This document shows, piece by piece, positions 1,770-39,682 of a stretch of 64,000 bases of DNA. Numbering within the stretch: position 1 is the first letter of the stretch; each line of letters begins with the position of its first letter. The position numbers and the translations under genes are program-made. Below the pieces are notes generated by a model, which did not search any database, was not told the DNA's origin, and worked only from the letters and a program-made list of their open reading frames with translations. The stretch lies in IMG/VR virus record IMGVR_UViG_3300042934_000594, positions 62,001 through 126,000 of that record; one strand, written 5' to 3'.

Positions 1770-2525
1770 TTATTGTGGTACCAGTTCGAGTAAAGGCCGC
1801 CAGTTAAGGGTGGCTGAATTTACAGCCGCGCTGGTGAAGTACAAAGGTCCCGTGCCCCCGCGTAGCACGGCAGCACCACCTGCCGTGAGTTCCTGACAGA
1901 CGCTAGGAACCGTTAACCCCAGTTCGGCGTTACTGAAGTTCGCCCAGCGGCTGGCCTGCCCTAGGGAGGTGGTGATCGGGTTAAACAAACTGTTCCACTC
2001 ACTGCCCTTAGCTACAGAGGGGTCGTTGACATTACCCCCCAGCAGGTAGTTCAGCGCTTGAATAGGATCCTCGATAGCGCCTTTGATCAGACGCACCTTG
2101 TAAGCGATACCCTGGATCTGAATCACCGCATTGCCCACCACCAGCATCAAGCCCTTAAGCTGGTCTCGAGTCAGTCCGCTGCGGATAGGTTGTTTGGCCA
2201 TGAACACAATGCGACCTGCCAAGTTAAACTTGAGCCAGTTGGTCTGCTCATTGATCAACGTGCCCGCAGTCAATCCCACCTTAGCGCACAGGGCTGTGGC
2301 CGAGATCAATTGCTCATGCGGGACTTCTCCATAGTAACCGTACAGTTCAGTGCCGCCCAGCAGCGTGGGGTTGGGCCCGACCGCCCGTCTGATTTGAAGT
2401 TCAAATCCCCCTAAAGACATGCCATCGTAGATACGTAACGTCTTGTCATCCACATTAAAGGCCAGTTCGCCTGACTGGCCCATGTAGTCGTTACATTCTT
2501 TCCGTGACCCACGCTTGATACGCAT
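1770..2525 (-). CDS. Virion/tail-associated protein, tandem paralog of 1031..1741
   Basis: KRGS...GELAFNVDDKTLRIYDGMSLGGF; YYGEV, WLKF, YKVRLIKG, GSEWNSL, WRPLLE; GGAGG RBS. Confidence 0.78.
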   Translation of the reverse strand: MRIKRGSRKECNDYMGQSGELAFNVDDKTLRIYDGMSLGGFELQIRRAVGPNPTLLGGTELYGYYGEVPHEQLISATALCAKVGLTAGTLINEQTNWLKFNLAGRIVFMAKQPIRSGLTRDQLKGLMLVVGNAVIQIQGIAYKVRLIKGAIEDPIQALNYLLGGNVNDPSVAKGSEWNSLFNPITTSLGQASRWANFSNAELGLTVPSVCQELTAGGAAVLRGGTGPLYFTSAAVNSATLNWRPLLELVPQ

Positions 2526-2535
2526 ACAACCTCCG

Positions 2536-3333
2536 TTATTGGGCTCCAGTGATAGAACGCAAATGACGGCGACGAGCTTCAGGATCGTTAAAGATCGAGA
2601 TCTTCTTCCAGCGTTTCAACGCATCCTTATAAAGCTGCGCGCAATCTGCCCATTCTAGGACCGCGCCACTGAAGCTTCCCAACTGTTGACCACCGGACAG
2701 GAACGCCTGGTCCATGGGAATTCGCATGGTGTTGTAGATGTAGGCTTTGACTGCCAACACGCACAACGCCGCAAAATCTGGAATCGCTGTGTAGCGAATG
2801 GTGGACAATGCCTCGTCATTGCCTAGACGGCAACGCAAATAGGCCGCCGCATAGGGCAGGTACACAAAACGGGTCATGATCGTGTTGTGGGCGATCAGGT
2901 TGATGTACGAGGTCTGAGCAGGGGGCGTGCGCTTGGCAGCGTCCAACACCTTACGCGCTTCAGACCCCATGGACGATTCGGTGTAGTTCAGCGCTTGACC
3001 ACCAGCCTGGTAACCCACGATCCCGAAGTGAATCGAGTACGCCTGGGTAATTGGGCGGTTCTGGGTCATCTCGTCCGGAATCTGGTAGACCACCGTGTAG
3101 GGGTCGATGTACCGGGTCTGCACCGGCAGGTCCAAAGGAATGAAATCCTCGGTCATGCCGTACAGGTCGATGTCCACCAACACCCGCGGGTTGATCACCG
3201 CTTCCCGGATTCGGGTTTCCATGGAAATCAGCTCACCACAGGTGGCCATCTCCTGAGTTACGAACACTTGCTGGAGGATCTGGGGAGGAATTTCCCAGAT
3301 GATTTCATCCATGGCCTTACTGATGGGATTCAT
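2536..3333 (-). CDS. Conserved Chimalliviridae protein (phiKZ gp42-like)
   Basis: [16 protein letters not shown] start, [11 protein letters not shown] and GGQQLG motifs; synteny. Confidence 0.7.
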
Positions 3334-5765: not shown

Positions 5766-6357
5766 CATGGACAATGCTGAACTCCCCAGCGAGCTCAAGC
5801 ATTATGAGGACATCCAAGACGATTTCCTGCCCATGATCAAGGGCATCGTCGATCGAGCCCGTGACGAGTACTACCGCGAGAAAGAAAAAGAGCCGTACCA
5901 GGCAGTGAACCTGTGGCCACCTGGGGCCGGCCGGTTCATGATGGTGTTCAAACTGGACGACCTGGGGGTGGACTACACCGACGTCAGCTTTCATTACCGC
6001 ATGGCGTTGGCTGAATCCTCTCGCGGGTATGCACAGCCTCAATCCGCGGTACGGGCTAAGGCTGAGACCTATGCCGAAGCGTACTTGATGCGCCTGGTGA
6101 CCAATGTGGTGCAGACCATCCTGGAACTGGAAGAGAACGACCCTGAGAATGCTTCGGACTACGTCTACATTGCTCGGGACATCATGCGCCCGTTGCAGGA
6201 GTACGAAGAGTTCGAGATGCTGATTGGGCGTGTGGCTGACATGGCCACCAGCGTGCGTTCACGGTTACCTGACGGCGTCACGTATGTGCACTACATCGGT
6301 AACTACCGGGAACGGTTGGCGTACATCTTTGCAGGGCAAACCCCGCTGGAGGAATGA
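5758..6357 (+). CDS. Hypothetical protein, array member
   Basis: 199 aa, GAGG RBS; MMVFKLDDL / VHYIGNYRERLAYIF. Confidence 0.78.
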   Translation: MNDMDNAELPSELKHYEDIQDDFLPMIKGIVDRARDEYYREKEKEPYQAVNLWPPGAGRFMMVFKLDDLGVDYTDVSFHYRMALAESSRGYAQPQSAVRAKAETYAEAYLMRLVTNVVQTILELEENDPENASDYVYIARDIMRPLQEYEEFEMLIGRVADMATSVRSRLPDGVTYVHYIGNYRERLAYIFAGQTPLEE

Positions 6358-6806
6358 TGCACCAGACTCACACGCTCACCCCCACCGTGGGGGTGCTCAC
6401 CGTGGACTTCGCCGCCTTAGGGTTTCACATCGAGGCCTTGGCCAACCGCCATTGGGAACTGATGAACCAAACGGTGCGTCAGACCAACCCCGAACAGGCG
6501 GTACCTGAGTTCATGTCGTTTGTGGTCAACTGTGCAACCCACTTTGACAACTACCGGCAGAACCCCAGTGTGGCTCAGGATTTCCTGACCACCGAACTGT
6601 TTGAGCTCTATGATGCGGACATAGACGCCACCACCCATATCCAACAGGTTCGGGAAGTGGTGACCAAGGTGTTGGCGATGATGCCCTCTACCTGCTATTG
6701 CAGTCGCCTGGTAGGGGTGCGTGGCAGCCTTGCGTTTATCTTTCTCGACCACGAGTCGGAGGCAACCCAGTATGCCCGCGAAACAGCCGCCCAATCCGGG
6801 GCTTAA
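6354..6806 (+). CDS. Hypothetical protein, array member
   Basis: 150 aa, ATGA overlap, GGAGG RBS; VLTVDFAAL / RLVGVRGSLAFIFLD. Confidence 0.75.
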   Translation: MMHQTHTLTPTVGVLTVDFAALGFHIEALANRHWELMNQTVRQTNPEQAVPEFMSFVVNCATHFDNYRQNPSVAQDFLTTELFELYDADIDATTHIQQVREVVTKVLAMMPSTCYCSRLVGVRGSLAFIFLDHESEATQYARETAAQSGA

Positions 6807-33990: not shown

Positions 33991-34017
33991 CCTGTGAGGC
34001 CTCAACAGCCTCACAGG
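33991..34017. other. Perfect 10-bp hairpin between the gp74-like and helicase genes
   Basis: CCTGTGAGGC-CTCAACA-GCCTCACAGG, no U-tract. Confidence 0.55.
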
Positions 34018-34064
34018 TGATAATCATGACCAGCATGCTCAAGGAACACCTGCTTTTAAACAGC

Positions 34065-35600
34065 ATGCCCATCATGCTGAAAGCAGAACGCTTTTCACAC
34101 GGTGTCCGCTTAAGCGGCTACAACCGAGACACGTTCTATCGACTGACCCAGTTCCTGGAGGGACTGTCACTTAAAGAGCCCAAGAAGCTGCCGCATGGCG
34201 GCATGGTCATGGAGCTCAAGAAAAAGTATTACGGTTTAACTGAGAACTACCGCGAATTATTCATCCACCGGAACAGTTACCCTGCGCTGGTGGCGTACCT
34301 GGGGCACAAAGGCATTAAAGAAGCTCAGATCGACTGCGTGGATATCCCCGTGCCGTCGGTGCTGCCCGCTGAATATGTCGTCAAGGAACTGTACGTCCTC
34401 AGGGACTACCAGGAGCCGATTGTAGCCGAGTTAGCCGATAGCCTGTACTCTCGGCGGCTTGACCTGCAAACAGGCAAGGGCAAGACTCTAAGCGCCTTAG
34501 CGGCCCTAGCGCAGATGCAAGGTCGTTGCGTGATCATGGTGCAGCCTAAATTCTTCGGGATTTGGGAGAAAGCCCTAGAAGAAACCTACGAAGGGTTCGA
34601 GAAAGGCAACCGCCGGGTCCGTAAGATCGAAGGGGGTGCACAGCTTCAGCGCTTGATCGAAGACGGCTTGGCCGGTGACATTGAGGAAGACATCTTCCTG
34701 GTCTCGGCCGTGACGTACCGTGGGTACATCGAAGCCTACGAGAAATACGGTGAGCACATTACCACCGAAGGCGGCTACGGGTGCGCGCCACCCAGGTTCC
34801 ATGAAGTCATTGGTGCCGGTACCCAGATCAACGATGAGATCCAGGACGACCCAGGCCTGGTGTTTCGCATTGACATCTTCACCAACGTGCGCAAACAGAT
34901 CTACCTCTCCGCCACGCCGTACACGGGCAACCCGTATGTGACGAAGATGATCGGTGTGCAGTTGCCGGAAGAGACGATGTGTACGTTGCCGACGTACGAC
35001 ATGTACATCAACTCGGTGGGTTTGTTGTATTCAGACCCTACCGTGCAGTCCAAGGATTACTTGACCCCGTTCAAGAACACCTACAACCACGCCCGCTATG
35101 AGACGCAAATGCTCAAGGCGAAACGTCGGACCACAGCGTACTACGCGATGGTCAAACGTGTGGTGGACAAGATCTACGTGGAAGACCGCTTACCCGGTCA
35201 GAAGTTATTGATCCTCTGCGCCACTGTGGCTTTCATCGACAAGTTGATGAAGCACATGAAGGAGCAGTATCCAGACCTGGCCATTGGTCGGTTTGTGTCG
35301 GGGGATGACTTCCGTACGCTGCAAACCAATGACATCACGATCTCCACGATCAAGTCGGCGGGTACCGGTCAAGACATCATCGACCTGCGTGAAGTACTGT
35401 TGCTGCAAGCCACCGATTCCAAGAAGGATAACGTGCAGATCTTGGGTCGGTTGCGTAAGCTCAAGAACTTCCCAGGACTGGTACCGAGGCTGACGTACAT
35501 GGTCTGTCAGCACATCCCGCACCACATCCGTTACCACAACAACAAAAAGGAGCACTTTGAAGGTAAGGTGCTCAGCCACCGAACCATGCGTATCGTTTAG
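34065..35600 (+). CDS. SF2 (UvsW-like) helicase (phiKZ gp75-like)
   Basis: LRDYQ, QTGKGKT, NDEIQD, LSATP and QILGRLR motifs; start uncertain (34026-34074). Confidence 0.9.
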   Translation: MPIMLKAERFSHGVRLSGYNRDTFYRLTQFLEGLSLKEPKKLPHGGMVMELKKKYYGLTENYRELFIHRNSYPALVAYLGHKGIKEAQIDCVDIPVPSVLPAEYVVKELYVLRDYQEPIVAELADSLYSRRLDLQTGKGKTLSALAALAQMQGRCVIMVQPKFFGIWEKALEETYEGFEKGNRRVRKIEGGAQLQRLIEDGLAGDIEEDIFLVSAVTYRGYIEAYEKYGEHITTEGGYGCAPPRFHEVIGAGTQINDEIQDDPGLVFRIDIFTNVRKQIYLSATPYTGNPYVTKMIGVQLPEETMCTLPTYDMYINSVGLLYSDPTVQSKDYLTPFKNTYNHARYETQMLKAKRRTTAYYAMVKRVVDKIYVEDRLPGQKLLILCATVAFIDKLMKHMKEQYPDLAIGRFVSGDDFRTLQTNDITISTIKSAGTGQDIIDLREVLLLQATDSKKDNVQILGRLRKLKNFPGLVPRLTYMVCQHIPHHIRYHNNKKEHFEGKVLSHRTMRIV

Positions 35601-35610
35601 TGGAGGACCG

Positions 35611-35790
35611 ATGTCTGATCGCTGTAAGTTTGTAGTGAGTTTGTTTTCGATGTTGGGCGTCATTGCAGCGTGGGCAGTGTTGATCCTCTGCTGCATGGCG
35701 CCTGGTTACCCGGCCCTTGGCATGACCATGGGTGGGGCTGTAGTAATCTTGGCGGCGTGGATGTACTACATCGCCCGCAACAACCTTTAG
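35611..35790 (+). CDS. Small two-TM membrane protein
   Basis: GGAGG RBS; two hydrophobic segments; followed by a terminator. Confidence 0.65.
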   Translation: MSDRCKFVVSLFSMLGVIAAWAVLILCCMAPGYPALGMTMGGAVVILAAWMYYIARNNL

Positions 35791-35812
35791 TTTTAGGGCT
35801 CCTCGTCCTTTT

Positions 35813-35836
35813 GGCTCCTTCGGGGGCCTTTCTTTT
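35813..35836 (+). terminator. Rho-independent terminator
   Basis: GGCTCC-TTCG-GGGGCC + TTTCTTTT. Confidence 0.7.
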
Positions 35837-35853
35837 CGTCTCGACCTTTAGGA

Positions 35854-35891
35854 CGACATAAAGCCTCCCCTGATGGGGAGGCGCTATGCTG
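35854..35891. terminator. Bidirectional hairpin CGACATA...TATGCTG
   Basis: CGACATA-aa-GCCTCCCC-TGAT-GGGGAGGC-gc-TATGCTG. Confidence 0.78.
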
Positions 35892-35903
35892 TTTCTTTTT
35901 TCT

Positions 35904-36431
35904 TTATTGCGGGGGCTTGAGGTCCAACTCCATTTGCATTTGCTTCTCCAGTTTCTTCCCTTTACTGGCCGACTCTTCCAGCGCACTGGCAGCCATGTCA
36001 TAATACAGCTCAGTTTCCCACACCGGCAGATCAAAGAACTGTTTGGCGGTCATGCCAAACGTTGTGTGCATCTTGAAGCTGTAGAACCTGCGCAAGGCAC
36101 TGGCGTATGGACTGCCTTCAACCACGTCTTCCTTATCGTGCATCGCCACCAACGCCAAAGGACGCAGCTTGCTAGCCCGAGGGTCTTCGTGGTTAAAGAT
36201 TCCGTACTCCGTCTGATACGCCATCCGTGTCATGATCTCAGTGGTCGTCGAACGCATGGCGGGCAGTTCCCGCAACATGGCATCCAGTTGACCGCGTTGA
36301 TTGACCCGCTCCAACCCGAAGCTGAGTAACGCGACGTGCGCGTTAGGGCCACTGCCTAGCGACAGTCGACTGTAACGCGCATCCTTGTTGATCGCAGGAC
36401 TCAGTTGAGCTTCCGGTTGGCCAACGTAAAA
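35904..36431 (-). CDS. gp76-like domain, probably translated as a -1 frameshift extension of the gp77-like gene (T4 gp51/gpT-like)
   Basis: Frame is open upstream through the gp77-like stop; first start is TTG at 36314 with no RBS; motif FGMTAKQFFDLPVWETELY. Confidence 0.6.
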   Translation of the reverse strand, partial: FYVGQPEAQLSPAINKDARYSRLSLGSGPNAHVALLSFGLERVNQRGQLDAMLRELPAMRSTTTEIMTRMAYQTEYGIFNHEDPRASKLRPLALVAMHDKEDVVEGSPYASALRRFYSFKMHTTFGMTAKQFFDLPVWETELYYDMAASALEESASKGKKLEKQMQMELDLKPPQ

Positions 36432-38173
36432 ACGGTGGTGAGCATGTCCAACGGCACCAGGTGGTCAAAGCGTGCGTGGAACTTCTCGGCCACTGGCGAT
36501 TCACAGTGCGGGCAGTTGTAGCTATTGATAGCCACCATCGAGATCATGCTTTCCTCGATGTACTCCTGGATCTTCTTGAAGAAGTCTTCGGCGTAGTCGT
36601 CATCCGACATCACCGAACCCAGGATACCCGCAATCACGTCGGTTTCACGCGTGACTTCAGTGACGGTGCCTTCCTCGTCCCGCTCCACCACAGCGCTCAC
36701 CCAGTGGGCGTATTGACGGGCGGTGGTGGCTTGACCGAGTTGCTCGATCCAGCGGTTGCGGTTGGTCCCGTGTGGCGGCTCGTTGAACGCACCCTGAGTC
36801 ATTTCCACAATGCCGTCGATCCAGGCCTTGCCCGATTCTTCGTGTTGCAGCACCGAGGGGGTGTGCAGTTCCAGACCCATGTCCCCGAACCAGACCGTGC
36901 GTTCCTTACCGCGCATGTGCTCGGCTTTGTACTTGGCCAGATCAGCATCAGTGGCCTTGTCGCTGGCTTTGCGCAGGCGCAGGGCCATGAACTCTTTCTG
37001 CCACTTGGTCAGGGAGTTCTCATCAGTGAACACCATCGAACGGAAGTTCAAGATGTCCTTGGTGATGTGCTGACATTTCGAAGCATCGGCCATGCACGGT
37101 GCAGCGTAAGGGTAGCCCTTTGGCCACATCACCGCGGCCAGACCCAGGAGCACGTGCTGCTCATCCATCGAATCAAGACGTTCCTTGATATCGGTGGGGG
37201 TGCGGAAGCTGATGTTGGCATCGATCACGTATTGCAAGGCGAAGTCCATGGCCACAGACATCAGTGCTTGCAGCGTGTTGGAGAACGCCAGACCCTTGGA
37301 CTCACGACCCAAGCTGACCTTGACCTGGTTCAACTCGTATTGCAGACCGGTGAGGTCAGCCAGCGTAGGCGAACTGAACCGCAGCCACAGGCCGGAACGG
37401 TAGCACGGCACGTCGAAGGTGGAGCCCGTACCGGTTTTGCGTTGGAAGTAACCGACCAGCTCTTCCTTGGTCAGCTGCTTAGGATCACCCAAGGTTTGCT
37501 TGGGGATACCTGGACGCAGTTCACGGCCATTGACTTCCAGCACGTTGGTCCAGTGGGAGCCTTCGCGCTCACTGGCCGCCAGACCGATGTTGTCCAGGCG
37601 TGCGCTGGAGATGGCATCGAACACGGTGCGCAACCACACGTTACCGTCTTCGTCGGTCAGAGGCTTGCCTTTATCGGCCAGGGCCTTGACCACACGCTCA
37701 TCACGTTCAGTCAAGCGTTCCAGGAGGGCGTTCTGCCGATCCATGACTTGTGTCACGTTGGCATACGACTCACGAAACAGCGACAGCGCTTCGATCAACG
37801 TCGGGACGTCACTGCCTTCTGGCAGGGGCGACGTCGTGGGGGCCTTGTCGTGAACCGTGAAGCTCACTTTCTTTTGGTCCGGGGTGAAAGGCGCGACTTC
37901 AGGCTCTTCGTCGTCGCCCTCATCGGCCTCAAGCTCGTCGCCACCGGCGGGGGTGGGTGCACTCGGCTGCGCCGGTGCAGCTGGGGTATCGCCCAACCAG
38001 TGTTCTTCACCGGCTTCAGCGATCTCACCACGTATGCGTTGCTGTTGTTCCAGGGTCCAGGCGTCCGGCGCTTCACTCGCCGGTTGTGCCATCTGGGCTA
38101 CGAACTCGTCGTAGGTGCCAACGAAGCCGCTTTTCAGCGCGGCGTCGTATTGTTCTTGATACGGCTGGTTCAT
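36401..38173 (-). CDS. Conserved protein (phiKZ gp77-like; baseplate-hub/tail assembly chaperone candidate)
   Basis: ATG 38173 in an ATGA overlap; SGLWLRF, WPKGYPY...C, RQYAHWV, CPHC; ends VPLDMLTTVFTL. Confidence 0.8.
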   Translation of the reverse strand: MNQPYQEQYDAALKSGFVGTYDEFVAQMAQPASEAPDAWTLEQQQRIRGEIAEAGEEHWLGDTPAAPAQPSAPTPAGGDELEADEGDDEEPEVAPFTPDQKKVSFTVHDKAPTTSPLPEGSDVPTLIEALSLFRESYANVTQVMDRQNALLERLTERDERVVKALADKGKPLTDEDGNVWLRTVFDAISSARLDNIGLAASEREGSHWTNVLEVNGRELRPGIPKQTLGDPKQLTKEELVGYFQRKTGTGSTFDVPCYRSGLWLRFSSPTLADLTGLQYELNQVKVSLGRESKGLAFSNTLQALMSVAMDFALQYVIDANISFRTPTDIKERLDSMDEQHVLLGLAAVMWPKGYPYAAPCMADASKCQHITKDILNFRSMVFTDENSLTKWQKEFMALRLRKASDKATDADLAKYKAEHMRGKERTVWFGDMGLELHTPSVLQHEESGKAWIDGIVEMTQGAFNEPPHGTNRNRWIEQLGQATTARQYAHWVSAVVERDEEGTVTEVTRETDVIAGILGSVMSDDDYAEDFFKKIQEYIEESMISMVAINSYNCPHCESPVAEKFHARFDHLVPLDMLTTVFTLANRKLN

Positions 38174-38718
38174 TGCGCGGTTTCCTGTTCGTCGTCCAAG
38201 CCGATCTCCACCACGCCGCCGGCGTGCAGTTGCTCGCACAGGGACAGGATCAACGGCTCGACCACGGTTTCCAAATTGGTGATCTCGGCGCTGTATTGAT
38301 TGGACAGCTCAAACACCTGAGGCAATTCAGTTGCGCTGGGTTGGCCAGCTTTGCCTTTGTGCTGGGCGGCAATGGCATCGAAGTTCTTCTTGGACGTTTG
38401 CAGGTCCTGGACCAGGTTCTGGAAGCTCTTCTGGAAGCCCGTGGCGTCCGGCAGGGTAGCCTTGATGTGGTCCATGCTCTGCATGACCGGTACGACGAAC
38501 GCGCTGGTCGACAACAGCTTGCCTTGGCCCAGGCGGCAGAACTCGGTGAGGATGTCCCAGCCCTTGGGGGATTGCAGTACTTGATCAGCGACTTGCGATT
38601 GCATTTCGAGCATCTCCTGTCGGACCTTTGCCTGCTCGTCGGCAGGCATCTGGTCAAAGTTTTCTACGGCTTTTGGGTCCACGACTTTGATCGCAGCGCC
38701 TTCGATGAGTTGAGACAT
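38170..38718 (-). CDS. Hypothetical helical protein
   Basis: 182 aa, AGGA RBS, coupled to the gp77-like gene. Confidence 0.78.
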   Translation of the reverse strand: MSQLIEGAAIKVVDPKAVENFDQMPADEQAKVRQEMLEMQSQVADQVLQSPKGWDILTEFCRLGQGKLLSTSAFVVPVMQSMDHIKATLPDATGFQKSFQNLVQDLQTSKKNFDAIAAQHKGKAGQPSATELPQVFELSNQYSAEITNLETVVEPLILSLCEQLHAGGVVEIGLDDEQETAQ

Positions 38719-38839
38719 GTAATAGGTTTCCTGAGGCGATTAATGACAATCTGACATATATAAAACAGCTGATGTAATTTTGTTCCTACTTGCGCACCTA
38801 ACTTTATGTCAGTATCTACCGAGTCTTAGGGATTTCATT

Positions 38840-39682
38840 ATGAACCTAGAGTTACAACTAGCCCTGGAGGGGTTGGTGACGCCCGAGCGTCTGGATCTGC
38901 TGCTCGAAGCCAATCGCCTGCTGAGCGGGTTGGGCTTAGACGTGGTGGGGGATGAACTGCAAGAGATCATCGAGATCCAAAACAGCAACGCCGACAACAC
39001 CATGCTGGTCTCCCGGTTAGACGACGTACTGACCATTGGGCTCAATCAAGCCCTGGATAGTTTTGGCGTGCGTTTGATTGACGACGCCACGATGGCGCAG
39101 CGCAATAACGTGCTGCACACCATCGCCTCGCTGGAGCACTACATCATCCCTGACCACCTGGTAGGGTTGACCATGGGCGACTTCACCAACGAGGAAGTCA
39201 TCGCCAACATGACACCGATCTTCACCACGTTGGGGGTTGAGGAAGCCATTGACGTGTTGGCCCTGGTCAGTGATGACCTGGTGGCCCGTATTCATGAAGT
39301 GGCATTGAACGCCATTCAACTGCGTGGCCCTGAGCCAGTGGACCTGTTACCCGACAACACCCGACGCGTCGCTCGCTTGAATCGTCTGATTAAAGGCAAA
39401 GGTGCAGAGAAGTGCACCATCGTCATGGAACTGGCTAATGCCGGCGTGCGTTGCGGCCGGCCACTGGATTCACTGATCCACCAAAACGTCGAGGTCATGG
39501 ACAGCTTTGATTCCGATCATCTTGCTTGTGAACTACTGGCCTTGGTTTACTTCAGTAACGCACCATTCGACGAGGCGTTTACGACGGCCCGGCGATTGGT
39601 TCAAGAGTTCACTGATGAGCTAAGTGAACAGAACCGACTGAACAAGTACCTCACCGACCTGGAACGGGTCGTAGAAGGCTGA
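38840..39682 (+). CDS. Conserved protein (phiKZ gp79-like)
   Basis: 280 aa, directly upstream of the vRNAP subunit. Confidence 0.72.
   Translation: MNLELQLALEGLVTPERLDLLLEANRLLSGLGLDVVGDELQEIIEIQNSNADNTMLVSRLDDVLTIGLNQALDSFGVRLIDDATMAQRNNVLHTIASLEHYIIPDHLVGLTMGDFTNEEVIANMTPIFTTLGVEEAIDVLALVSDDLVARIHEVALNAIQLRGPEPVDLLPDNTRRVARLNRLIKGKGAEKCTIVMELANAGVRCGRPLDSLIHQNVEVMDSFDSDHLACELLALVYFSNAPFDEAFTTARRLVQEFTDELSEQNRLNKYLTDLERVVEG

What the first reader, a model, noticed from the sequence alone, without database searches (positions are those of the whole stretch)
35904..36433. Second probable -1 frameshift: gp77-like to gp76-like, a G/GT-style tail-assembly chaperone pair
Seen: the gp77-like gene ends ACC GTT TTT ACG TTG GCC AAC CGG AAG CTC AAC TGA, with a T5 run at 36432-36428. 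The downstream ORF is in the -1 frame, stays open across this site (F-YVGQPEAQLSPAINKDARYSRLSLGSGPNAHVALLSFGLER...) and has only an RBS-less TTG as its first start. Palindromes GTTGGCCAAC and ACAGTCGACTGT follow the site. Established: lambda G/GT and P2 E/E+E' chaperones use -1 shifts, P2 at a U-run. T4 gp26 ends with CxxC followed by a Phe-rich tail and is adjacent to gp51. Inference: CPHC...VFTL followed by the FGMTAKQFFDLPVWETELY domain is the jumbo-phage equivalent, giving 590-aa and about 756-aa products.
Basis: partly seen in the sequence, partly recalled or inferred. Interest (0 to 1): 0.7.

Follow-up and report, generated by a model that had tools for sequence, protein, structure and literature searches.

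The report
Recoded tail-assembly chaperone gene, jumbo phage
A jumbo-phage gene related to the phage T4 baseplate-hub assembly chaperones gp26 and gp51 most likely makes a short and a long protein by slipping back one base at a run of U's, and the same unannotated site is present in every phiKZ-like phage examined.

Summary
The gp77-like gene (36401-38173, minus strand, 590 aa) ends as quoted. It has a T5 run at 36432-36428. The -1 frame stays open from 36464 to 35904 and has no ATG, GTG or TTG before 36314.

Four independent metagenome assemblies carry the identical sequence, so this is not an assembly error.

All 36 phiKZ-like (Chimalliviridae-type) loci examined show the same layout:
- a T5-T8 run in the same codon phase;
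- a downstream frame that is always -1 and open across the run;
- an extension of 149-179 aa;
- start codons at scattered positions or missing.

The start-less stretch evolves as coding sequence. TTT is used at the site even in genomes that otherwise avoid it.

The upstream protein has the fold of the T4 gp26/gp51 hub-assembly chaperones. The end of the extension matches the C-terminal tail of T4 gp51 in profile comparisons. The same U-run with a -1 frame occurs in 79 of 79 T4-like cyanophage loci, in PhiW-14 and in phiR1-37.

The best reading is a programmed -1 shift, probably ribosomal, giving 590-aa and 756-aa forms of an assembly chaperone. The kind is known; the phiKZ-like case appears unreported. 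No protein-level evidence exists.

The parts
38170..38718 (-). gp78-like ORF (182 aa). Its TGA overlaps the ATG of the next gene (ATGA). It is the first gene of the conserved gp78-gp77-extension unit.
   Evidence: The same gene order appears in the annotated records.
36401..38173 (-). Zero-frame gene, phiKZ gp77-like, 590 aa plus TGA. This is the short form. Residues about 234-580 have a T4 gp26/gp51-like fold.
   Evidence: P0001. tblastn found 210 phage records. It matches PHROG 4585. AF2 model pLDDT is 76.6.
36503..36514 (-). CPHC motif about 25 residues before the FF/VF site. It aligns with CPEC of T4 gp26.
   Evidence: (C554, P555 and C557 invariant).
36428..36434 (-). Proposed shift site C GUU UUU (T5 at 36432-36428). 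tRNA-Phe on UUU 36430-36428 re-pairs with UUU 36431-36429, and the next codon read is UAC 36428-36426.
   Evidence: It is the only T>=5 run in the 1.9-kb gene, and TTT is 3 of 22 Phe codons elsewhere in the gene.
35904..36431 (-). -1 frame extension: 174 residues after the shifted Phe, then TAA. The long form is 756 aa.
   Evidence: It matches PHROG 12109.
36315..36400 (-). Stretch of the -1 frame after the zero-frame stop and before any ATG, GTG or TTG. It includes the conserved DARYSRL and PN(A/G)HV..FG motifs.
   Evidence: 58 synonymous against 42 non-synonymous codon differences in this frame, against 8/90 and 14/74 in the other two frames. Third-position differences are 71, against 26 and 30.
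35964..36095 (-). gp51-tail-like helical domain of the extension (extension residues 113-156, ...FYSFKMHTTFGMTAKQFFDLPVWETELYYDMAAS...).
   Evidence: hhalign A4 against A2, probability 90.5%, E 1.4e-6. links A4 to T4 gp51 residues 199-244. It is the only confident part of the model.
35863..35882 (-). Intrinsic-terminator-like hairpin (8 bp, 7 GC, then TTTAT) about 20 nt after the extension's stop. It marks the end of the unit.

Best explanation
The gp77-like gene and the ORF after it are one recoded gene. Most ribosomes end at TGA 36403-36401 and make a 590-aa protein. A minority slip back one base on GUU UUU A (36433-36427), when tRNA-Phe re-pairs from UUU to the overlapping UUU, and then read a further 174 codons to give a 756-aa protein.

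Both forms share a domain with the fold and C-terminal CPxC...FFxL signature of the T4 hub-assembly chaperones gp26 and gp51. The added part ends in the same small helical module as the C-terminal tail of T4 gp51. The short form therefore corresponds to gp26 and the long form to gp51. The two are made at a fixed ratio from one mRNA, as with lambda G and GT.

Shown here: the anatomy, its conservation, coding-type selection on the start-less stretch, and the homologies. Inferred: that the shift occurs at all, that it is ribosomal, its efficiency, and the role in baseplate or tail assembly.

My odds are about 0.85 that a -1 recoding joins the two frames. Within that, about 0.6 goes to the ribosomal route and about 0.25 to RNA-polymerase slippage.
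For: (1) 36 of 36 Chimalliviridae-type loci, from Pseudomonas, Xanthomonas, Erwinia, Ralstonia, Burkholderia, Serratia, Klebsiella, Vibrio, Salmonella and Halocynthia phages and from metagenomes, sharing down to about 18% protein identity, have a T5-T8 run 27-114 nt before the stop. In all of them the downstream frame is -1 and open across the run, and the extension is 149-179 aa. The +1 frame was examined in 16 of these loci and holds only a short ORF, 3-83 aa.
(2) The run always ends at base 3 (or base 2, for TTC or TTG) of the codon aligned with the second F of xFFTL. 20 of 30 sites are canonical U_UUU_UUY/G heptamers.
(3) The first ATG, GTG or TTG of the -1 frame lies anywhere from -30 to +219 nt relative to the stop. 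In phiKZ, Deimos-Minion, AH06, pEa54, KpHz_2 and Haymo, conserved motifs lie upstream of it.
(4) The 90 nt after the stop evolve as coding sequence in the -1 frame.
(5) TTT is kept at the site even where TTC dominates: Xoo-sp14 has 0 of 14 TTT elsewhere, RSL2 0 of 18, the window 3 of 22. The site is the only T>=5 run in 24 of 30 genes.
(6) It is not an assembly error.
(7) Fold matches are to 'baseplate hub subunit / hub assembly chaperone' models, with probability 0.99-1.0 and TM by target 0.5-0.57. PF12322 covers T4 gp26 and gp51 and weakly hits the phiR1-37 and RSL1 proteins, which also match the model structurally.
(8) Extension against cyanophage -1 peptides: probability 90.5%. Those peptides against the T4 gp51 tail: probability 86%.
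(9) The same U_UUU_UUC/A site with an open -1 frame occurs in 79 of 79 cyanomyophage loci, in P-HM2 and in PhiW-14. phiR1-37 has a T5 site, CTT TTT ACC, with an open -1 frame.
(10) T4 gp26 and gp51 are listed as hub assembly chaperones (PMC3004832).
Against: No protein, ribosome-profiling or RNA evidence was obtainable. The window's site is only T5, and C GUU UUU allows re-pairing of the Phe tRNA alone, so efficiency may be low. No conserved or unusually stable downstream RNA structure and no upstream Shine-Dalgarno-like element was found (the window's z-score is +0.8). Some relatives have an ATG at or just after the stop (RP12 at 0, RSL2 at +9, Psa21 at +24, PhiW-14 TGATG), so independent or coupled initiation of the second ORF may exist in some lineages. 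Sequence-level membership in PF12322 is not met. The gene is not next to a tape-measure gene. The title of Vladimirov et al. [quoted passage not shown]
Confidence: 0.8

Rival explanations
1. Programmed transcriptional slippage. The RNA polymerase (in phiKZ-like phages, the phage's own non-virion enzyme) adds one extra U on the T-run in a fraction of transcripts. Ordinary translation of those mRNAs then gives the same 756-aa protein.
For: The signal is a homopolymer run with no detectable stimulatory RNA structure. Run length varies from T5 to T8 between lineages. The conserved codon phase could simply follow from the conserved FF residues. The title of Vladimirov et al. [quoted passage not shown]
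Against: From general knowledge, known programmed slippage by multisubunit polymerases uses runs of about 9. Here the runs are T5-T8, strictly T6 in 79 of 79 cyanophage loci and T5 in the window clade. The run never drifts out of the X_XXY_YYZ phase. The same site type is kept in phages that use very different polymerases (host RNAP in T4-like phages, phage RNAP in phiKZ-like ones), whereas the ribosome is the common factor. The required change is always -1.
Confidence: 0.22
2. These are two separate genes. The downstream ORF is translated on its own, from TTG 36314, from a non-canonical start, or by termination-reinitiation at the TGA. The T-run is only the codons of a conserved Val/Phe-Phe.
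For: All 25 GenBank records examined annotate two genes. Some relatives have an ATG overlapping or close to the stop (RP12, RSL2, Psa21, PhiW-14). RSL1 has a small ORF with its own ATG in the +1 frame and no T-run.
Against: Conserved, purifying-selected coding sequence lies upstream of every ATG, GTG or TTG in the window and in many relatives. The first start codons are not aligned and lie up to 219 nt after the stop. The frame is -1 in 36 of 36 loci, although the distance from run to stop varies between 27 and 114 nt. TTT is used against codon bias. In P-HM2 the -1 frame opens exactly at the run. T4 gp51 carries the same two parts fused in one frame.
Confidence: 0.07
3. It is an artefact or decay: an indel introduced by assembly in a homopolymer, or a recently broken single gene.
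For: Homopolymers are error-prone, and the window comes from a metagenome.
Against: Four assemblies from three studies are identical here. Isolate genomes sequenced independently show the same arrangement, and no homolog with the two parts in one frame was seen among 36 loci.
Confidence: 0.01

Closest known systems
T4 gp26 and gp51 (Pfam PF12322 T4_baseplate; baseplate-hub assembly chaperones), with the U-run sites reported in TAC-N genes of T4-like phages (Vladimirov, Gautam & Davidson 2022, known here only from its title and from a sentence in PMC12846349)
   Same: The fold of residues about 234-580 matches. The C-terminus has CPxC followed by FFxL. The end of the extension is homologous to the gp51 tail. 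T4-like cyanophages carry a U_UUU_UUC/A site and a -1 'gp51' frame at the same place.
   Different: There is no Pfam-level sequence match. The upstream protein is 2.5-3 times longer, with about 230 extra N-terminal residues. The extension is about 175 aa against about 60 aa, with an added conserved module (RYSRL, NGHV..FG, YQTEYGIF.H, RPLALVAMHPKED). T4 itself uses two separate genes and has no U-run (TTC TTT). The window's site is T5 rather than a heptamer.
Lambda G/GT and P2 E/E+E' tail assembly chaperones (Xu, Hendrix & Duda 2004)
   Same: [quoted passage not shown] The slippery site needs no obvious stimulator. P2 uses U_UUU_UUG, as does pEa_SNUABM_54 here. The proteins appear to be non-virion: the 201phi2-1 record marks gp138 as identified by mass spectrometry but not gp136 or gp135.
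   Different: There is no sequence or fold relation to gpG-type families. The pair does not lie before a tape-measure gene; it lies between a gp78-like gene and a terminator, next to a helicase gene on the other strand. The proteins are several times larger.
GTTTTT site proposed for TAC-N/TAC-NC of Pakpunavirus (Vandenendeviridae) and Andersonviridae phages (PMC12846349)
   Same: The same short G-UUUUU motif lies at the 3' end of the short-form gene, with an uninterrupted -1 frame across regions annotated as intergenic. The argument there is also comparative.
   Different: Those are different phage families and a conventional small TAC next to the tape-measure gene. Homology to the window's protein was not tested.

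Membership tests
Programmed -1 frameshift tail-assembly-chaperone pair (lambda G/GT type) | A second ORF in the -1 frame overlaps the 3' end of the first, is open across a slippery site and lacks its own conserved start | tested here: met
   36 of 36 loci are -1, and start codons are scattered from -30 to +219 nt.
Programmed -1 frameshift tail-assembly-chaperone pair (lambda G/GT type) | Canonical X_XXY_YYZ slippery heptamer in the zero-frame phase | tested here: inconclusive
   The window has C_GUU_UUU, where only the A-site (or P-site) Phe codon can re-pair. 20 of 30 relatives have U_UUU_UUY/G and 6 of 30 have N_UUU_UUY.
Programmed -1 frameshift tail-assembly-chaperone pair (lambda G/GT type) | Position immediately upstream of the tape-measure gene | tested here: not met
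   A terminator and an oppositely oriented helicase-like gene follow. The synteny is gp78 - gp77 - extension - small ORFs - RAD2/SF2 helicase.
Programmed -1 frameshift tail-assembly-chaperone pair (lambda G/GT type) | Both products detected, at a low fixed ratio | not testable with these tools
   No proteomic or ribosome-profiling data were reachable.
T4_baseplate (PF12322; T4 gp26/gp51) | Match to the Pfam model above its cut-off | tested here: not met
   There was no hit for the window protein at E<=1 and none in five Chimalliviridae genomes at E<=10. The T4 control scored 215 and 178 bits.
T4_baseplate (PF12322; T4 gp26/gp51) | Shared fold | tested here: met
   BFVD matches to about 250-aa 'baseplate hub subunit / hub assembly protein, T4-like / hub assembly chaperone' models have E 8e-5 to 1e-2, probability 0.99-1.0 and TM by target 0.5-0.57 over residues about 234-580. 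AFDB 'baseplate protein' clusters also match. Both sides are predictions, and no solved structure matched.
T4_baseplate (PF12322; T4 gp26/gp51) | C-terminal CxxC followed about 25 residues later by an FFxL end | tested here: met
   The window has NCPHC...TTVFTLANRKLN*. T4 gp26 has KCPEC...KEFFELL*. hhalign aligns only this segment, at probability 1-2%.
T4_baseplate (PF12322; T4 gp26/gp51) | The long form carries the gp51-type C-terminal tail (FYQ.N..LV...YSL..I..MIP.ER) | tested here: met
   A4 against T4 gp51 gives probability 86%, E 4.9e-6. A4 against the window-clade extension gives probability 90.5%, E 1.4e-6. The direct comparison of A2 with gp51 is not significant.
Programmed transcriptional slippage | A homopolymer run long enough for RNA polymerase realignment (about 9 in known bacterial cases, from general knowledge) | tested here: not met
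   The window has T5. The family ranges from T5 to T8, and the cyanophage loci are strictly T6. Polymerase behaviour itself is not testable here.

The most novel reading that the evidence does not exclude
The U-run -1 recoding may be an ancient, near-universal feature of the gp26/gp51 chaperone family across very different contractile-tailed phages: T4-like cyanophages, PhiW-14, phiR1-37 and all nucleus-forming jumbo phages. T4's two genes, 26 and 51, would then be the same short/long pair split into separate genes. In nucleus-forming phages the pair has grown threefold and gained a conserved module of about 110 aa in the long form that T4-like phages lack, which may mean an added role in baseplate or tail assembly particular to these phages. 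On this reading phiKZ gp77 and PHIKZ076.4, now 'hypothetical', are the missing tail-assembly chaperone of Chimalliviridae.
Probability: 0.55. Interest if true: 0.7.

Novelty: new member of a known kind. Interest (0 to 1): 0.55.

Why it matters
It assigns a function and a gene structure to a core gene pair of nucleus-forming jumbo phages (phiKZ gp77 and PHIKZ076.4, PhiPA3 gp074/073, 201phi2-1 gp136/135, and the SPN3US pair at 36054-38440). All 25 records examined list these as two hypothetical genes, often with truncated or arbitrary starts. It points to an assembly chaperone that has not been identified in these therapeutically used phages. It links that chaperone to T4 gp26/gp51. It also provides a well-defined recoding site with a natural series of U5-U8 variants, which can be used to test ribosomal against polymerase slippage, including by the phage's unusual RNA polymerase. 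On the practical side, annotation pipelines should join these two ORFs.

Tried and rejected
Searches and comparisons that gave nothing:
- The search for related loci with the single extension protein found no relatives. The broad alignment A3 was too diverse to seed a scan.
- A3 as a profile found nothing in phiR1-37, PhiW-14, RSL1 or T4.
- PDB sequence searches, Foldseek PDB, VIA wide PDB (only helix-level Z<=6.6) and AFDB Swiss-Prot gave no meaningful match.
- The AF2 model of the extension alone is poor (pLDDT 54.6), so its N-terminal two thirds remain structurally uncharacterised.
- hhalign of A1 against T4 gp26 and gp51, and of A2 against gp51, was not significant.

RNA stimulator: folding 70 nt downstream of the site in 30 genomes showed no conserved or unusually stable structure. 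ACAGTCGACTGT is simply the YSRL codons and is not palindromic in relatives.

The window itself is held only by soil DNA runs.

Literature: eight of the ten searches found nothing on a frameshift in phiKZ gp77 or in Chimalliviridae. 'gp77' in the papers returned refers to other phages' numbering. The key paper, Vladimirov et al. 2022, is not held.

Full report
**Observation.** On the minus strand the gp77-like gene ends ACC GTT TTT ACG TTG GCC AAC CGG AAG CTC AAC TGA, with the stop at 36403-36401 and the T5 run at 36432-36428. The -1 frame is open from 36464 to the TAA at 35906-35904. It reads ...FYVGQPEAQLSPAINKDARYSRL..., and its first ATG, GTG or TTG is the TTG at 36314. The gene-called zero-frame product is 590 aa, starting at ATG 38173, which overlaps the stop of a gp78-like ORF as ATGA. 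A shift after F582 gives 756 aa. Both palindromes are present. The window is part of a 269-kb virus record from soil. Four runs from three studies carry 35800-36800 with no difference and no indel, so the frame break is real.

**Comparative test.** The upstream protein has homologs in 210 phage records, all phiKZ-like jumbo phages. tblastn with the stop-to-stop -1 frame found 83 records, and the alignments began at query residues 2-12. That is inside the overlap and before any start codon. I fetched 25 annotated genomes and 11 metagenomic loci and analysed the junctions.
- In 36 of 36 loci there is a T5-T8 run 27-114 nt before the stop.
- The following ORF is in the -1 frame and open across the run.
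- The extension is 149-179 aa.
- The +1 frame, examined in 16 of the 36 loci, holds only a short ORF of 3-83 aa.
- The run always ends on the codon aligned with the second F of a conserved xFFTL.
- 20 of 30 sites are U_UUU_UUY/G heptamers and 6 of 30 are N_UUU_UUY. The window's clade (4 of 30) has N_GUU_UUU.
- The first start codon of the -1 frame lies anywhere from 30 nt before to 219 nt after the stop.
- In an alignment of all the extensions the first start codon falls at unrelated columns. In phiKZ, Deimos-Minion, AH06, pEa_SNUABM_54, KpHz_2 and Haymo it falls after conserved motifs.
- None of the 25 records annotates a joined gene.

**Selection.**
- Among the window and three relatives of 60-66% identity, the 90 nt after the zero-frame stop show 58 synonymous against 42 non-synonymous codon differences in the -1 frame, against 8/90 and 14/74 in the other two frames. 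Differences concentrate at third positions (71, against 26 and 30).
- The 33-nt block from GTTTTT to the stop is almost invariant at the nucleotide level in that clade.
- TTT is used at the site against codon bias. The window has 3 TTT among 22 Phe codons elsewhere, Xoo-sp14 has 0 of 14 and RSL2 has 0 of 18. The site is the only T>=5 run in 24 of 30 genes.

**No stimulator.**
- Folding the 70 nt after the site in 30 genomes gave no conserved structure, with z-scores around zero (the window's is +0.8).
- The palindromes are not conserved.
- A terminator-like hairpin follows the extension (35882-35863).
- No sigma-70-type promoter-like site was found anywhere in 35600-38900, which includes the junction between the two frames.

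**What the proteins are.**
- Pfam gives nothing, and the PHROG families 4585 and 12109 have no assigned function.
- An AF2 model of the 590-aa protein (pLDDT 76.6) has no solved-structure match.
- In BFVD its residues about 234-580 match about 250-aa models named baseplate hub subunit, T4-like hub assembly protein, or hub assembly chaperone, with probability 0.99-1.0 and TM by target 0.5-0.57. AFDB clusters agree.
- PF12322 covers both T4 gp26 and gp51. It weakly hits the phiR1-37 and RSL1 proteins that also match the model structurally. It does not hit Chimalliviridae directly.
- T4 gp26 ends KCPEC...KEFFELL*, like the window's NCPHC...TTVFTLANRKLN*.
- T4 gp26 and gp51 are listed as hub assembly chaperones (PMC3004832).

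**The extension and gp51.** Following the structural matches outside the family gave these results:
- phiR1-37 has CTT TTT ACC, an open -1 frame of 97 codons and no early start.
- PhiW-14's gp26 ends GAT TTT TTC GGT TGA, with a -1 ORF.
- The PhiW-14 -1 peptide hits T4-like cyanophages across the gp26|gp51 boundary.
- In P-HM2, gp26 ends GAT TTT TTC GCA TAG and the -1 frame opens exactly at the run. Only its last 30 codons are annotated as 'gp51'.
- 79 of 79 cyanomyophage loci have NNT TTT TT(C/A) GNN stop with an open -1 frame of about 59-67 codons.
- A profile of these peptides matches T4 gp51 residues 199-244 (probability 86%, E 4.9e-6) and the window-clade extension residues 113-156 (probability 90.5%, E 1.4e-6).

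T4 gp51 is therefore a gp26-like domain with this tail fused in frame. The frameshift product elsewhere is its equivalent.

**Mechanism.** The most likely route is ribosomal -1 slippage of tRNA-Phe on the U-run. The phase is constant, most sites are true heptamers, the runs are short, and the ribosome is the factor common to phages with different polymerases. Polymerase slippage is not excluded. Independent initiation cannot explain the conserved start-less coding sequence, though it may add to expression where an ATG abuts the stop.

**Literature.** No held paper links phiKZ-like phages to this site. Vladimirov et al. 2022 identified the TAC genes of T4-like phages. That paper is known here only from its title and from PMC12846349, which states that poly-T signals occur in TAC-N genes of T4-like phages and reports a GTTTTT site in other myophages. 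The kind is therefore known, and the Chimalliviridae member appears new.

Noticed in passing
L002 (phiKZ AF399011.1) 2501-3016: PHIKZ076.4 is annotated only from an ATG 219 nt after the gp77 stop (80 aa). The homologous open -1 frame starts at the T7 run inside gp77, so about 90 conserved codons are unannotated.
   Followed up: yes
L053 (Prochlorococcus phage P-HM2 NC_015284.1) 1501-1695: The gene annotated 'gp51 baseplate hub assembly catalyst' is a 30-aa ORF. The homologous frame is 64 codons and opens exactly at a T_TTT_TTC site 7 nt before the gp26 stop. The same holds in 79 of 79 related IMG/VR loci.
   Followed up: yes
L040 (Yersinia phage phiR1-37) 2115-2408; L038 (Delftia phage PhiW-14) 2208-2405: Two phages outside the Chimalliviridae carry the same U-run with a -1 ORF after a gp26-like gene. 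PhiW-14 also has an ATG overlapping the stop (TGATG).
   Followed up: partly
L039 (Ralstonia phage RSL1) 2141-2341: This is an exception. Its weak PF12322 homolog has no T-run and is followed by a 66-codon ORF in the +1 frame with its own ATG. Whether that ORF is related to the extension was not tested.
   Followed up: no
L032 (T4 NC_000866.4) 6349-6404: T4 gene 28 is annotated as starting 56 nt inside gene 27. Gene 26 also has an annotated internal product, 26'. Neither was examined further.
   Followed up: no
window 34017-35600 (+) and 35205-35696 (-): A 527-aa ORF on the opposite strand lies where relatives have the RAD2/SF2 helicase, and overlapping minus-strand ORFs also occur here. These ORFs were not analysed. 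The finding's title implies another candidate frameshift elsewhere in the window, which was not looked for.
   Followed up: no
L016 (Erwinia phage Deimos-Minion) 2730-3278: The downstream gene DM_272 is annotated from an ATG 136 nt inside DM_273, upstream of the T8 run. This is an artefact of choosing the longest ORF in the open -1 frame.
   Followed up: partly
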